NCBI RefSeq assembly: GCF_001194135.2
Contig: NC_068981.1
Coordinates: 175,503,253 to 175,563,508, forward strand
Origin: Octopus bimaculoides
Lineage: Eukaryota
Direction: 5' to 3'
Length of the DNA stretch: 60,256 bases
Positions 861-32,372 of this stretch are shown here, one piece after another. The stretch's first letter is position 1. The number at the start of each line of letters is the position of its first letter. The notes below the pieces were generated by a model. The model saw only the letters and a list, made by a program, of their open reading frames with translations, did no database searches and had not been told where the DNA came from. The translations under genes were made by a program, and so were the position numbers.

Positions 861-1139
861 GAAGCAGCAGCATCAGAAATATGTACGTCGCATTTATATT
901 GTTTGTACATACTCAATCTCTCTTCCTCCCCGTCTCTCTCACACACATACACACACGCGCACAAACTCATGTTTATATAATTTCTGTCGCTCTCCAGTGG
1001 CTACGATTCGTCGGATATGCGCGCACGCTAGTTTTTCTCCTTTACTTTCTCTAGATTTATAACAGTTAGAGTCTATTTTTTTTTATCACACGGTAGAATA
1101 AATAGATCGAGAGAAGTAAACATCGCAATATTCAATGAA

Positions 1140-1162
1140 ATGTTGATGACGACATTGATGAC

Positions 1163-1197
<35 letters not shown>

Positions 1198-1271
1198 GGG
1201 GGAGGAGGAGGAGGAGGATGAGGATGAGGATGATGATGCGGATGAGGATGAGGATGAGGATGAGGATGAGG

Positions 1272-1302
<31 letters not shown>

Positions 1303-1750
1303 GGATGATGATGATGATGAGGAGGAGGAGGAGGAGGAGGATGAGGATGAGGATGATGAGGATGAGGATGAGGATGAGGATGATGATGCGGATGAGGATG
1401 AGGATGCGGATGAGGATGATGATGATGATGATGAGGGGGAGGAGGAGGAGGAGGATGAGGATGAGGATGATGAGGATGTGGATGAGGATGAGGATGATGA
1501 TGCGGATGAGGATGAGGATGAGGATGAGGATGATGATGATGATGATGAGGGGGAGGAGGAGGAGGAGGATGAGGATGATGANNNNNNNNNNTGATGATGA
1601 GGAGGAGGAGGAGGTGGATGATGATGATGATGACGACATTGATGACGATGATGATGATGATGAAGATGATGATGATGATGATGAGGAGGAGGAGGAGGGG
1701 GGATGAGGATGAGGATGATGATGAGGATGAGGATGAGGATGAGGATGAGG

Positions 1751-1781
<31 letters not shown>

Positions 1782-1990
1782 GGATGATGATGAGGAGGAG
1801 GAAGAGGAGGAGGTGGATGATGGTGATGATGATGATGATGATGATGTGGTTATGATGATGATGATGATGATGATGACGACGACGACGACAATCACGATGA
1901 CGGTGATGATGACAACGATGACGACGACGACGACGACGACGACGTTGATGATGACAGTGATGATGATGTCGTTGATGACGATGGCGACTA
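1140..1990. repeat. Compound (GAT)n/(GAG)n/(GAC)n trinucleotide array with higher-order units, spans a 10-N gap
   Basis: Directly visible; source of the poly-D/E, poly-M, poly-S and poly-H ORFs. Confidence 0.95.
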
Positions 1991-13029: not shown

Positions 13030-13842
13030 ACGCCCTCATTAGATGAAGTAATGACATCAATAACTAAAATGAATTCTAGTAGGGCACCTGGAAATTATTG
13101 AATTTGTGATGAGGTCTTGCGGTGGTAGTGATTACATCATACAATCCCTTCATGAACTTATTAGTGCAGTCTGGATGGATGGTGCAATGCCTAAGGACTA
13201 GATGGATGCAATTATTCTTCCTCTATATAAAAGAACAGGAGCCAGAACAGTGTGTGGTAACTACAGAGGTATTTCTCTATTATTGGCTGCTGGCAAGGTT
13301 CTGGCAAATATTCTTCTTACTCGTCTGAATGGGTGTCTCGTAAATGATGTCCTATTTGAATCTCAATGTGGCTTCCGATCTGGTAGAGGGAAAATGGATA
13401 TGATTTTTACAGCAAGAGAGATGCAGAAGTGCTATGAGCAGAATATGGTCTTGTCCATGTAGTCATTGATTTAACGAAGGCCTTTGATATAGTAAATAGG
13501 CCTTTTCTATGGAAAATACTTCGCAATCTTGGCTGTCCGGATCACTTTGTATCTATAATTAAATCATATCATGATGGGATGGAGGTTTGGGTCAATGTTG
13601 GTAGTGGCAATGGCAGGACACATTCCTGTAGAGAATGGTGTCAAGCAGGGTGACATCCTTGCTTCAACTCTCTTTTCTTTGTGCTTTGCTGTTGCTTTTA
13701 CTCATTCTTTTGCTAATGTTAACTCTCTGGGAATATATGTCAGGTATCTATCTTCTGGCCGCCTCTTTAATCTGCGCCGATTTGCTGCCAATTTAAAAGT
13801 TCTCCAGTTTATTATTCGTGACCTCTTTCATGCAGATGACTG

Positions 13843-13843
<1 letters not shown>
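13030..13843 (+). mobile_element. RTE (BovB-like) LINE reverse transcriptase N-terminal part, inverted relative to the 3' part
   Basis: PSLDEVMTSITKMNSSRAPG...DAIILPLYKRTGARTVCGNYRGISLL...ESQCGFRSGR...IDLTKAFDIV...NGVKQGDILASTLFSL...LFHADDC; stops and frameshifts. Confidence 0.97.
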
Positions 13844-13927
<84 letters not shown>

Positions 13928-13935
13928 CATACATA
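13844..13935. repeat. (CA)n microsatellite abutting the RT ADDC codons
   Basis: Directly visible. Confidence 0.95.
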
Positions 13936-14865
13936 TATATATGAACAAATTCAAGAAAGAGTAGGACAAGCTGCTCACATTTTTCAAAAGTCGTTTGGAG
14001 GAACAGTGAATACTTCACAAATATTGCAGAGATATTTCATGAGATATTCCTGGAATGAAGATATAAACGTGATTGTATGTGCACAAAACACATACACAAA
14101 ATGAAAATAATCATACGCAAAATGAAAGCAAATAACACACACTTGTGTATTATGGTATGGTACTCTCAATGTCCCTAGTCCACCCAGCTTCACGATGTTG
14201 TTGCTACCGTTTTTTTTTGCTTTGTTTTGTGGTCATTTAGATCCAAGCCGGATCAAATTGGGCAAACATATAATCAAAAACAATCTAGCCATAGTTTCAC
14301 CATCTTATTCAAGATGGCAGTTTATCCAAGAATGTTGCAATTTGCGTTCGCTTTTTAGACTAATAAATGGGTAATTTCAACGATAAAGAACTAATGTTTG
14401 TAACGAGTAGAGTCACCTCCTAGAGCCTCATTCGTCAGTTCACTGTAAAACAAATTACCCTACTTCGCTGTTGTCCCAGACACCGTGACATTGATAATTC
14501 CATGCTTGATTTCAACTTACCTCTTTAATCTATCCAGAAGACATAGACTTTGGCTTTCTTGGTTTATTTTGTAGCCTCGACCGTTGCAATCTCCCAGAAG
14601 CTGGGGAGACTGATGCCAATCAGTCTTTTACATCTCATATTATTTTCAGGTACAGCGTATTTAGAACGATCTAAATTGAATATGTCGTTCTTCCTATTGC
14701 AAGGTGGTAGAGTGTGATCTGAAGGTGATTTGGTTGCCTGTTTCTAAGAATATTGAAAGAACAAGTGCTGGTTTCTCTGTTGGATCAGCTTCTGATGACG
14801 TGTGAAACCATGCTGATATATAGAGTGAGATAGACAAAGACAGAGACAGGATGAAGAAAAAGGAA

Positions 14866-23531: not shown

Positions 23532-24915
23532 AGAGGTGTATTCCAAAAAGTTTGAGTCATTGTTAATAACTATCATAGATTAATTTAATTATAGTATTTC
23601 ATTCCAATACTTCTACTAAACTGACATGTCAACTTTGAACACATCCTACTAAACATTGCTTACTACAGTTCAGTGCTTCGCAACTGGGATGCCGCGGCAC
23701 ACTGGTGGGCCACGGGACGATGCTTTTAGTTATATTTTTAATTCAGGTGTGCCACCGAATTTTGTAAAGAGTATGTGTATCTCAAGTGAGAAAAGGTTGC
23801 GGGACACTGCTGCAGCTGACTAGCTGGCACAATGCAGACGGGATGTTACGACAATTTGGAAACTCGCTATGTATTAAAAGTTGTGTGTTAAACTGCACCA
23901 CAACGCTACAGAAGCTTATGAATTGCTGGAAACTGCTTATCGATTAAATTGCATGAGCCGAGCCTTTATCTTTAGCTGGCGCAAGAGGTTTAAAGACGGT
24001 AGAGATAATGTGAATGACGATGAGAAATCTGGAAGAAGGACATCAGAGTTGCTTAGGAAAATATGCAACTTCCTGGATGAATTCATCCATGTGTCTATAA
24101 AGACAAGGGCATACAGTTTGTAGTTGGTGTGACAACTGCACACATAATTATTCGTGACGATCAAAACGTGCAAAATTTGTGGCAGGTTTATTTACAGGGT
24201 GCTCAGTGACAAAGAGAAGGAAAGACGCATCAATGAAAGCAGGAAGATGGTTGAGCTCATTACCACCAATCCAAGAGTAATTGAGTCCTTGGTGACGTGT
24301 GACGAAAGCTGGATCTACTATTATGATCCTGATACCAAAACACAGAGTTCTCAATGGAAGCATCCTAGCTCACCCAAACCCAAGAAGGCCAGGTAAATTA
24401 AGTCCACCGGAAAGCTCATGATGGCCCATTCTGCAATAGCAATCTACATCTACAGGGTTCTCTCTGGTCAGACAGGCAACAAAGAGTACTTTGTGAATGC
24501 CTTGAGGGAGTTCAGGAAGGGATTTCGCCGCAAAAGCTCGGGTCTGTGGCACCTGGGACAGGACAAAATACCAGTTCACAATTCCATCCTGGTAACTAGT
24601 TACTTGACAGAGATGAACATCAAGAATGTCCCTTACCCTCCCTACAATCCAGACCTTGCTTCTTATGACTTTTGATTATTCCCCAAGCTGAAGAAGCTCG
24701 GGTCCGTCGTTTTGAAGACATTAAGGTAAAGCAGACTGTGACAAGGGGTCTGAACACCTTCACCTTGGAGGACTTTCATTGGGCCTTCACAAAGTAACTG
24801 GAGGTGATATAACAAGTGCACTAAAGTCAGAGAATACTAGTTTGACAGTGATTAGAGTTTTTGTACTTCTTTGAAATAAATAAATGACTATCCTGAAAAA
24901 GTCTCAAAACTTCCC
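23532..24915 (+). mobile_element. Mariner DNA transposon, transposase pseudogene (about 23870-24830)
   Basis: CVKLHHNATEAYELL...WRKRFKDGRDNVNDDEKSGR; SLVTCDESWIYYYDPDTKTQSSQWKHPSSPKPKKAR; WHLGQDKIPVHNS...PYPPYNPDLASYDF. TIR remnants AAAAAGTTTGAGTC and GTCTCAAAACTT are degenerate. Confidence 0.95.
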
Positions 24916-25145: not shown

Positions 25146-25688
25146 TTATAGTGTAGTTATTATTTTTCTTCCCCCGCACTCTCTCTCTCCCCTTCACTCT
25201 CTCTCTCTCTCTCTCGCTATCTCTTTCTCTCCTTAACATATGAATGATGTATATGGACAAACTACACCAACTTGTCGCGTAAGAAACATTAACTGAACTG
25301 AACTGAAACGCCAGTGCTTAACTTACAGCATCAATTCTCTTACGGAGGTCTCACTGAGGATAAACTGCATCTCGACACTAATCGATAGGTGTAGTTCTTA
25401 ATTATGCTAGACTAAAATTATGAACTTATGAATAAAACTGACTTATATGCCAATGGCAAATTAGTTTCTGAGTATAATTTAACTAACATGCTTTTATGTT
25501 AATTTGCATATAATTTCTTCTCTGAACATTAATATATATGAAGTGTCAAGTTGAAAATATAATCAAGTTTCAAATGATTACTTTTAGGAATTAAACAAGA
25601 AATTCGTGACGCTAAAATCAATCATATTTTTCCATTTACACTTTAGGGATTCCTATCTCAGTTAACATATAAGATATGTATCTAATTA

Positions 25689-27465
25689 CACTGATCAACA
25701 AGTATTCATCTTGAAAATTGTACGTGACAAGATGTGGTTTACTTTAAAGGTGTGTTTCCATGATGTAAATGAAATACATGCATACACGTCATTAATTGGA
25801 ATTTCTATATAAAGCATGCTTTATATAGAAATTCCAATTAATGACGTGTATGCATGTATTTCATTTACATCATGGAAACACACCTTTAAAGTAAACCACA
25901 TTATTCATTGCTGCATCGTTCAGATGCAATATTTCATCATCTTAATTTAGCCAATCAAATTTTGTCTGATGAAATAGATATTTCAACAACTCAAATTGTC
26001 CAGTCGTAATTGGTCTGATGAAATATTTCATCTCAAATCCAGTATAAGTATAACCGTTTGTATCTATTTCCTTACTTGTTTTACAGTGTTAACAATGTCA
26101 AGAAAGTATAGAAATCGCCCTGATTTTTTTATTTTTTATGTCTGTTGACAATATATTGCGAAAGCTCAAAAACATACAATAACTCCAGAGATCAAGAAGT
26201 TATACTTTGATTGTCCTCTTGGAGATCAGGACAAGTTATGGGCGTCACATTTTATCAACTCAGCTTGCTCAAATAGCTTGCATGACTGGTTCAATAATAA
26301 TAAGAAGTTCATGCTTTTTGCCATTTCAATGATATGGAGGGAGCTGAAAGAGCATTTTAATAACTGTTAATTTTCCAAAGTAAATATCACAGAATTTTCT
26401 ATGTAGAATAAACACAAAATTGTGTATCCCAATTTGGATTCTACAATGAAACCTGTGCATCACAATTAAAGTCTTCCAATTCCAGTTCCACCAGATGATG
26501 GTATTGAAACATCAGATGATGATGCTGACTGTCACGATAATGCTGCTGAGGAAGATTATGTGGCTGATGATGATAGCTTTGGACCTCAGAAATTTTCCCA
26601 AGCTGAACTGAATGACCTTGTCAGAGACTTAGCCCTCTCAAAAGGTAAAGCAGAACTGTTGGCATCAAGACTGAAAGAGAAGTATCTGCTAGAGCATGGT
26701 GTTCGTATAACTTATTTTCGACAGAGAAATGTGGTTCTACAAACGTGTTTTTATGTCGAAGGCCCACTTTGCTTTTTACAGTAATATCGGTGGACTTTTC
26801 GAATGTTTATCACAAAATCATGATCCTGCAGAGTGGCATTTGTTTATTGACTCTTCAAAAACGAAGTTTAAAAGTTGTACTTCTCCATAATGGAGAATCA
26901 TATGAGAATATGGAACTTTTACTTCATGACATATCCTATGAAAGATACTCATGGAAAATATGTGGAGATTTAAAAGTCATTGGAATGTTAATGGGAATGC
27001 AGTCAATTTTCACAAAATTCTCTTATTTCTTGTGTCAATGGGATTGTTGGTCAACTGACAGATATTATTCGGAATCAAACTGGTAGACAAGAACATCATA
27101 CCAGCCAGAACTGTCTAACGTCTACACCTCTTGTAGATCCATGTAATGTCCCGTTGCCTCATTTGCACATAAAGCTTGGACTGATGAAACAGTTTGTAAA
27201 GACACTAGGGAAGAGAAATGCCAGAGGGTTTGAATATATTGTGGATTTGAATATATTGTTTCCCAAAATCACACAGGTGAAGTTGAAAAAGGGTTTCTTT
27301 GTAGGACCCCAAATTAGAGAAGTACTCAAAGATGTCAACTTCAAGACAACGGTGGATGAACTGGAACTGCCAAACTGGAATGCTCTCAAATGAATCTGTG
27401 AGAATTTCTTGGGCAGCAAAAAGGCAATGGACAACAAGGAAGGCATCAAGATCGATAGATATGGA
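25689..27465 (+). mobile_element. Chapaev-3-like (CMC) DNA transposon remnant, 3' internally deleted
   Basis: ATG 26095: MSRKYRNRPD..YVC...YFDCPLGDQDKLWASH...MIWRE...IVYPNLDS; FSQAELNDLVRDLALSKGKAELLASRLKEK; WKICGDLKVIGML; LHIKLGLMKQFVKTL; GFFVGPQIR. Putative terminus TTA|CACTG at 25686-25693; acceptor-like TTGTTTTACAG just before the ATG. Transposase identity is strong; the Chapaev-3 label is recalled. Confidence 0.8.
25732..25901. repeat. Perfect 170-bp palindrome (85-bp arms, no spacer)
   Basis: Checked base by base: ATGTGGTTTAC...ATAAAGCA|TGCTTTAT...GTAAACCACAT, centre between 25816 and 25817. Confidence 0.98.
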
Positions 27466-28220: not shown

Positions 28221-28230
28221 NNNNNNNNNN

Positions 28231-32362: not shown

Positions 32363-32372
32363 NNNNNNNNNN

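What the first reader, a model, noticed from the sequence alone, without database searches (positions are those of the whole stretch)
25732..25901. Perfect spacerless 170-bp palindrome inside a heavily decayed transposon
Seen: 85-bp arms with zero mismatches and no loop, 43 bp inside the putative Chapaev-3 left end and about 195 bp upstream of the transposase ATG, while the transposase itself has many stops and frameshifts. Established: long spacerless palindromes extrude cruciforms, are unstable and normally gain central deletions. Inference: a recent fold-back or template-switch event, arm-to-arm repair, or an assembly or library chimera. If real and transcribed it would yield an 85-bp dsRNA hairpin that could supply endo-siRNA against this family or serve as an ADAR substrate (A-to-I editing is extensive in coleoids).
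Basis: partly seen in the sequence, partly recalled or inferred. Interest (0 to 1): 0.75.

Follow-up and report, generated by a model that had tools for sequence, protein, structure and literature searches.

The report
Perfect 170-bp palindrome in dead transposon
A flawless 170-base palindrome sits 43 bases inside the left end of a broken Chapaev3-type DNA transposon; it is most likely a recent local copying error (an inverted duplication) of no known function, but I had no raw reads and cannot exclude an assembly mistake.

Summary
Arms 25732-25816 and 25817-25901 are 85 nt, 100% complementary, with no spacer, and this is the only complex palindrome in the window. The host element is a Chapaev3-type (CMC) DNA transposon. 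Its left end at 25689 (A-TTA|CACTGATCAACA) matches the terminal repeat and TWA target site of 18 full-length relatives I recovered. The copy is dead: about 8 stops, at least 2 frameshifts, a 15-aa deletion, and a 3' truncation near 27450. 18 of 99 family-invariant residues have changed, roughly 9% neutral decay. If the arms were that old, about 15 differences between them would be expected; there are none. The palindrome is therefore at least 5 times younger than the decay, or it is homogenised, or it is not real. It is not a family feature, since none of the 18 relatives has one in that region. The best explanation is a recent template-switch (fold-back) inverted duplication. Which arm is native could not be resolved. 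A local assembly or gap-closing artefact remains a serious rival. The dsRNA, siRNA and ADAR ideas are untested. Interest is low to moderate.

The parts
25686..25688 (.). TTA target-site copy, preceded by A at 25685
   Evidence: One search shows the sequence ...ctaatta|CACTG. The relatives are flanked by TTA or TAA on both sides. Chapaev3 elements make TWA duplications between A and T (PMC4079192). The second copy cannot be checked because the right end is missing.
25689..25702 (+). Left terminal inverted repeat, CACTGATCAACAAG
   Evidence: It is an exact match to the family pattern CACTGRTCAACA. The same terminus is present in inverted orientation at both ends of 18 full-length relatives. Local alignment of 25689-25731 to the 5' end of L003 gives p = 0.01.
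25703..25731 (+). 29 nt of subterminal sequence between the terminal repeat and the palindrome
   Evidence: There is no significant match to the family profile beyond the terminal repeat.
25732..25816 (+). Left arm of the palindrome (85 nt)
   Evidence: There is no other copy in the window.
25817..25901 (+). Right arm of the palindrome (85 nt), the exact reverse complement of the left arm
25902..26096 (+). Rest of the transposon's 5' untranslated region. It holds three repeats of about 48 bp, each with a quasi-palindromic TCTGATGAAAT core: 25923-25938, about 25965-25985, and a perfect 16-bp palindrome at 26017-26032.
   Evidence: The core is conserved at the start of the closest relative's contig L001, which aligns from 25951 onward, and in L003.
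26097..27450 (+). Chapaev3-type transposase pseudogene. It covers residues 1-467 of about 555, with about 8 in-frame stops, at least 2 frameshifts and a 15-aa internal deletion. The C-terminal ~87 aa, the 3' UTR and the right terminal repeat are absent.
   Evidence: The copy is 64% identical to P0001, and 18 of 99 family-invariant residues are changed.

Best explanation
The palindrome is a real and evolutionarily recent inverted duplication, made in one step inside the 5' subterminal region of a long-dead, 3'-truncated Chapaev3 (CMC superfamily) DNA transposon.

Proposed mechanism (inferred). During replication or repair synthesis the growing strand left its template at what is now the centre (AAAGCA|TGCTTT). 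It copied 85 nt of the opposite strand backwards and then returned to the original template. Two outcomes fit: an 85-nt inverted copy was inserted next to its source, or an older imperfect inverted repeat was overwritten so that total length was kept. The surrounding array of short quasi-palindromic repeats offers sites for such a strand switch.

The structure has no demonstrated function. It is a by-product sitting in junk DNA, and it is young enough not to have acquired arm mismatches or a central deletion.

Shown: the palindrome in the assembly, the identity and boundaries of the transposon, the age contrast, and the absence of the palindrome from relatives. Inferred: that it exists in the animal's DNA, and the template-switch mechanism.
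For: (1) The palindrome is perfect and far beyond chance.
(2) Both flanks are collinear parts of one element in one orientation. The left flank is the genuine left terminus with its TWA target site. The right flank is the 5' UTR running into the transposase. So the contig is not a chimera of unrelated loci.
(3) The distance from left end to ATG is 408 nt with the palindrome and 323 nt without one arm. Both fall in the family range of 258-1542 nt, and the closest relative with known ends has 402 nt.
(4) The palindrome is not at a contig end or next to a gap. This differs from the clear assembler fold-back at L074:1-100.
(5) Age contrast: 18 of 99 invariant residues changed gives about 0.088 substitutions per site. 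About 15 arm differences would be expected if the arms were equally old. Zero are seen, which puts the arms at or below about 0.018 substitutions per site at 95%.
(6) None of the 18 full-length relatives has a comparable hairpin in the 5' region. It is therefore a secondary event in this copy or its sublineage.
(7) The local context is rich in short palindromes, including a perfect 16-mer at 26017.
(8) Template switching is documented to create perfect inverted copies and hairpins in a single event (PMC5453318, PMC10710096, PMC8794818).
Against: A six-frame protein search and a 23-mer scan of metagenome contigs also found nothing.

The window comes from a gap-rich draft with 14 N-gaps, where local errors are plausible. 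The ancestral state is unknown. Neither arm can be shown to be native. Microhomology at the outer junction is at most 2 nt (CA). The one documentation criterion I read required new stems of 30-55 bases (PMC10710096), so 85 nt would be long for this kind of event. A spacerless 170-bp palindrome is expected to be unstable.
Confidence: 0.5

Rival explanations
1. Local assembly, gap-closing or library artefact. The true sequence has one arm only, or two arms separated by a spacer that was collapsed at a short natural palindrome. The perfect spacerless palindrome would then exist only in the assembly.
For: The window is a scaffolded draft with 14 N-gaps of 10-887 nt. Perfect identity and zero spacer are what software fold-backs produce. 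A textbook case turned up in a short-read metagenome contig fetched here: L074:1-100 has 50-nt perfect arms and no spacer at the very end of the contig. Zero arm divergence in a roughly 9% decayed element is explained at no cost. No independent evidence for the junctions could be obtained.
Against: The palindrome is internal to an 18.7-kb gap-free stretch, 2.3 kb from the nearest gap. Both flanks are collinear pieces of one transposon at a family-typical spacing, so there is no chimera between loci. It is the only such structure in 60 kb, so it is not a systematic error. A graph-based assembler needs reads that contain the central junction in order to write it (established knowledge, not tested here).
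Confidence: 0.3
2. The 170 bp is a nested insertion of an unrelated fold-back (MITE-like) element, or of two inverted copies of a short repeat, into the transposon's 5' subterminal region. Neither arm would then be native to the Chapaev3 element.
For: Neither arm resembles the subterminal region of the closest relative or the adjacent repeats. Without the whole palindrome the 5' region would be 238 nt, just below the shortest relative at 258 nt. A precedent exists in the family. L044 carries a palindrome with 101-nt arms (96% complementary, 3-nt spacer) in its 3' UTR. That unit also occurs elsewhere, at L043:5192-5586, and is absent from L044's close relatives, so it is a nested foreign repeat.
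Against: There is no target-site duplication. The only possibility is a self-complementary AT hidden in the arm ends. There is no second copy of the arm in 60 kb of a repeat-rich window. Natural fold-back elements normally have a loop and some arm mismatches, as the L044 example does.
Confidence: 0.13
3. The hairpin is a maintained and functional feature. It would be either a structural element of this transposon subfamily kept perfect by selection or arm-to-arm correction, or a hairpin-RNA locus that yields endo-siRNAs or serves as an ADAR substrate.
For: A transcript of the 5' region would contain a perfect 83-85-bp stem. Rfam models of many long-stem miRNA families score it at E down to 1e-11 on both strands. 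Template-switch hairpins can evolve into miRNA genes (PMC10710096).
Against: All Rfam hits are far below their gathering scores and are symmetrical on both strands. They reflect structure only, with no family membership. No relative has the hairpin. The element is dead and truncated. The closest relative's contig starts downstream of the homologous position. No expression, small-RNA or editing data could be consulted.
Confidence: 0.05

Closest known systems
Chapaev3 group of the CMC (Chapaev-Mirage-CACTA) DNA transposon superfamily (e.g. Merrow, Garfield, Conan; PMC4079192)
   Same: The termini are 5'-CAC...GTG-3' (CACTGGTCAACA in the family, CACTGATCAACA in the window). The target duplication is TWA between A and T. 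The transposase is a single ORF of about 555 aa with the C(2)C, LH and H(4)H motifs. The family is spread widely across animals.
   Different: The window copy is a pseudogene that lacks its 3' third and right end. Placement relative to the named Repbase families was not tested, because no Repbase was available. No described Chapaev3 feature corresponds to a subterminal 170-bp palindrome.
Template-switch mutations that create perfect inverted copies or hairpins in one event (PMC5453318, PMC8794818, PMC10710096)
   Same: An exact reverse-complement copy of immediately adjacent sequence, with perfect pairing, and younger than its surroundings.
   Different: 85 nt is longer than the 30-55-base stem criterion used in PMC10710096. 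The loop is zero. The ancestral state needed to call such an event is not available here.
Fold-back artefacts at the ends of short-read contigs
   Same: A perfect, spacerless palindrome in a short-read assembly. Example: L074:1-100.
   Different: The window's palindrome is internal, has two different and biologically coherent flanks, and lies far from any gap.
Nested fold-back repeat in another family member (L044:2568-2772)
   Same: A long palindrome in a non-coding part of a Chapaev3-type element.
   Different: The L044 palindrome has 4% arm mismatches and a 3-nt spacer. Its unit recurs elsewhere (L043) and is clearly foreign to the element. None of this could be shown for the window.

Membership tests
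Chapaev3 group (CMC superfamily) transposon | Terminal inverted repeats with invariable 5'-CAC ... GTG-3' termini (PMC4079192) | tested here: met
   18 full-length relatives have CACTGGTCAACA... and ...TGTTGACCAGTG at their two ends. The window has CACTGATCAACA at 25689. The window's right end is missing.
Chapaev3 group (CMC superfamily) transposon | 3-bp TWA target-site duplication, inserted between A and T | tested here: met
   11 of 18 relatives have identical TTA or TAA on both sides. The window's left flank reads A-TTA|CAC. For the window copy itself the duplication cannot be verified, because there is no right end.
Chapaev3 group (CMC superfamily) transposon | Transposase motifs C(2)C, LH and H(4)H | tested here: met
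   The consensus of alignment A1 has CCFLCLWDSR, PPLHIKLGL and HFLHSHLDFF, with C326/C330 and L375/H376 invariant and H485/H490 in at least 90% of sequences. The window keeps LPHLHIKLGL, has a damaged C(2)C (SYFLCQW), and has lost H(4)H through truncation.
Chapaev3 group (CMC superfamily) transposon | DDE catalytic triad, and phylogenetic placement with Repbase Chapaev3 transposases | not tested
   There are no Pfam or PDB sequence matches. No Repbase library was available, and no structure prediction was run.
Template-switch (fold-back) inverted duplication | Exact reverse-complement copy of adjacent sequence | tested here: met
Template-switch (fold-back) inverted duplication | Ancestral or sister sequence that lacks the inverted copy | not testable with these tools
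   No second copy from the same species was reachable. Distant relatives lack it, but their non-coding regions do not align.
Template-switch (fold-back) inverted duplication | Microhomology at the switch points | tested here: inconclusive
   At most CA (2 nt) at the outer junction. The centre is necessarily self-complementary.
Mobile fold-back / MITE-like element | Target-site duplication and multiple genomic copies | tested here: not met
   There are no direct repeats at the borders except a possible hidden AT. There is no other copy in the window. Genome-wide copy number is not testable here.
Described miRNA / hairpin RNA families (Rfam 15) | Score at or above the family's gathering threshold | tested here: not met
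   The best hit is 68.7 bits against a threshold of 119 (MIR7996). All hits are sub-threshold and most occur on both strands.
Assembler fold-back artefact | Palindrome at a contig end or gap edge, and absent from raw reads | tested here: inconclusive
   The position criterion is not met: the palindrome is internal and 2.3 kb from the nearest gap.

The most novel reading that the evidence does not exclude
A single template-switch event in a dead Chapaev3 transposon has just created an 85-bp perfect hairpin, larger than the 30-55-base stems screened for in the one study I read. If it lies in a transcribed region it would be a newborn hairpin-RNA locus, able to feed endo-siRNAs against the remaining family copies or to be hyper-edited. 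That would catch the birth of a small-RNA gene before any decay has set in.
Probability: 0.07. Interest if true: 0.55.

Novelty: new member of a known kind. Interest (0 to 1): 0.25.

Why it matters
If the palindrome is real, it is a clean, datable example of a one-step inverted duplication in an animal genome. It has a perfect 85-bp stem and is much younger than the dead transposon that carries it. It would be useful as a case study of template switching and of how long a spacerless palindrome survives, and as possible raw material for a hairpin RNA. If it is an artefact, it flags a local error class in this draft assembly.

Independent of the palindrome, the work pins down the ends of a widespread and unannotated transposase family that has no Pfam match. 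The ends are CACTGGTCAACA terminal repeats with a TWA target duplication.

Tried and rejected

Independent assemblies. Exact look-ups of five window ORFs around the palindrome found nothing on record.

Other copies:
- A six-frame translation of 25300-26100, searched as a protein, gave no hit at E <= 10.
- A 23-mer from the arm had no match in metagenome contigs.
- There is no second copy in the window.

Which arm is native:
- A profile HMM of 34 family end sequences matched nothing significant beyond the terminal repeat.
- Local alignments of each arm to L003's two ends gave p = 0.18-0.54, and to the adjacent repeats p = 0.58-0.64.
- I first saw a CACGTCA motif in the left arm at the same offset (~96) as a family-conserved motif. 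I rejected it as evidence after these tests.

A candidate right end at 40188-40199 has one mismatch, but 0.88 such matches are expected by chance. It has no TWA flank and no transposase C-terminus nearby, so I rejected it.

Rfam membership was rejected. Pfam and PDB sequence searches of the transposase found nothing.

Organism identification with a composite query of window ORFs returned only unnamed hits of 50-79% identity.

The central GCATGC (an SphI site) is not informative, because every spacerless palindrome has a palindromic hexamer at its centre.

Full report
**Observation.** The window contains a perfect, spacerless palindrome. The arms are 25732-25816 and 25817-25901, each 85 nt and 100% complementary, with centre AAAGCA|TGCTTT. 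I scanned every centre in the window for perfect hairpins with loops up to 40 nt. This was the only complex one; all others were (AT)n runs. As single-stranded DNA it folds at -93.8 kcal/mol, against -14.3 +/- 2.7 for shuffles. At 29% GC, chance would give on the order of 1e-44 such structures in 60 kb (my arithmetic). The window is a scaffolded draft with 14 N-gaps. The palindrome lies inside an 18.7-kb gap-free stretch, 2.3 kb from the nearest gap.

**The host element.**
- Downstream of the palindrome, an ORF series starting at ATG 26097 is 64% identical to a 554-aa protein (P0001). It has more than 1,000 homologues of about 555 aa in many animals, none with a Pfam domain.
- The window copy covers residues 1-467 only. 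It has about 8 in-frame stops, at least 2 frameshifts and a 15-aa deletion, and it ends near 27450.
- An intact relative in the Oratosquilla oratoria genome (L003) shows the element's ends. These are CACTGGTCAACA... on the left and ...GTTGACTAGTG on the right, each flanked by TTA.
- Among 80 further loci fetched from metagenome contigs, 17 more full-length elements show the same structure. They have terminal repeats CACTGGTCAACAAA/TTTGTTGACCAGTG and are 2.1-4.6 kb long, mostly 2.1-3.1 kb. Across all 18 full-length elements, 11 have identical TTA or TAA on both sides.
- These are the published hallmarks of the Chapaev3 group: CAC...GTG termini, a TWA duplication between A and T, and the transposase motifs C(2)C, LH and H(4)H (PMC4079192). 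All three motifs appear in the family alignment.
- The window has A-TTA|CACTGATCAACA at 25689, an exact match to the family pattern.

**Is the palindrome a family feature?** It is not, at the level I could test. In the 18 full-length relatives the longest perfect hairpin in the 5' region has 14-nt arms. The distance from left end to ATG is 258-1542 nt in relatives and 402 nt in the closest one with known ends. In the window it is 408 nt, or 323 nt without one arm, or 238 nt without both. All of these are compatible with the family range or nearly so. The non-coding regions of these distant relatives do not align with the window beyond the terminal repeat. The test therefore says nothing about sister copies in the same genome, which I could not reach.

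**Age contrast.** At 99 alignment columns that are invariant in 30 family members, the window copy differs at 18. Treating those changes as neutral since inactivation gives about 0.088 substitutions per site. Arms of that age would differ at about 15 positions, and they differ at none. This bounds the arms' age at about 0.018 substitutions per site (95%). That is at least five times younger than the decay, unless the arms are being homogenised or the structure is not real.

**Origin.**
- Both flanks are parts of one transposon in one orientation. The junction is therefore local and is not a join of unrelated loci.
- The 5' region next to the palindrome is an array of repeats of about 48 bp. 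Each has a quasi-palindromic TCTGATGAAAT core, and one contains a perfect 16-bp palindrome at 26017. The core is conserved in the closest relatives.
- This context favours strand switching. Template switching is documented to write perfect inverted copies in one event (PMC5453318, PMC8794818, PMC10710096).
- I therefore favour a single template-switch inverted duplication. It either inserted 85 nt or overwrote an older imperfect repeat.
- I could not decide which arm is native. Neither arm is significantly similar to L003's subterminal regions (p = 0.18-0.54), to the adjacent repeats (p about 0.6), or to a profile of family ends. Outer-junction microhomology is at most 2 nt.

**Rivals.**
1. 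*Local assembly artefact.* The draft nature of the assembly and the perfection of the structure fit this reading. A short-read contig fetched here shows a textbook fold-back at its very end (L074:1-100). Against it, the window's palindrome is internal, has coherent flanks, and is unique in 60 kb.
2. *Nested fold-back element.* Another family member, L044, carries a palindrome with 101-nt arms, 96% complementary and with a 3-nt spacer. Its unit recurs in L043 and is absent from L044's relatives. In the window there is no target duplication and no second copy.
3. *Functional hairpin.* Rfam gives only sub-threshold, two-stranded hits to many long-stem miRNA families, which reflect structure alone. 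The closest relative's contig begins downstream of the homologous position. No expression data could be consulted.

**Limits.**
- Exact-ORF look-ups, a six-frame protein search and a metagenome scan found no independent copy of the locus.
- The organism was not identified, so the coleoid and ADAR context is unverified.

**Verdict.** The choice between a real inverted duplication (about 0.5), an artefact (about 0.3) and a nested fold-back element (about 0.13) needs reads or sister copies. This is an instance of a known kind of event in junk DNA, so interest is low to moderate.

Noticed in passing
window 23881-24800 (+): Decayed mariner-type transposase remnants just upstream of the Chapaev3 element. 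They have a Mos1 HTH_48 match, and homologues with Transposase_1 at about 50% identity.
   Followed up: partly
window 13559-14101 (+): A fragment of a non-LTR retrotransposon reverse transcriptase. It is 79% identical to P0138, which carries RVT_1 and endonuclease domains. It is interrupted by a (CA)n run.
   Followed up: no
L044:2568-2772 (and L044:2844-2978, L043:5192-5586): Another Chapaev3-type element carries a palindrome with 101-nt arms (96% complementary, 3-nt spacer) in its 3' UTR, plus a direct copy of one arm. The unit recurs outside the element in L043 and is absent from L044's close relatives. It is therefore a nested foreign repeat.
   Followed up: partly
L074:1-100: A perfect spacerless palindrome with 50-nt arms at the very start of a metagenome contig. 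It looks like an assembler fold-back artefact and serves as a yardstick for that class.
   Followed up: no
L003-L064, both ends of 18 full-length elements, offsets ~55-105: Beyond the 12-14-bp terminal repeat, the family shares conserved subterminal motifs at both ends in inverted orientation. They read roughly GTGCTGAWTYCRAAWMTG ... TTTCTATCASGTCAGGTTTT. They are candidate transposase-binding sites. L031 has nearly identical terminal repeats of about 140 bp.
   Followed up: partly
window 26017-26032 (also 25923-25938, 25965-25985): Three spaced copies of a quasi-palindromic motif (GATGAAATATTTCATC, perfect at 26017) lie in the transposon's 5' UTR. The TCTGATGAAAT core is conserved in L001 and L003.
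   Followed up: partly
window 1582-1591, 28221-28230, 32363-32372: Three of the 14 N-gaps are exactly 10 nt and the others are 44-887 nt. This suggests two different gap conventions or scaffolding stages in the assembly.
   Followed up: no
window 1074-1830: A long imperfect (GAT/GAG)n trinucleotide array that would encode an Asp/Glu-rich tract. I did not examine whether it is an exon or a microsatellite.
   Followed up: no
L003 (Oratosquilla oratoria) vs window: The closest genomic relative of this element is in a mantis shrimp, at 55% amino-acid identity. Homologues occur in a frog, an aphid and a sea slug. This patchy spread fits the horizontal transfer reported for Chapaev3 elements.
   Followed up: no
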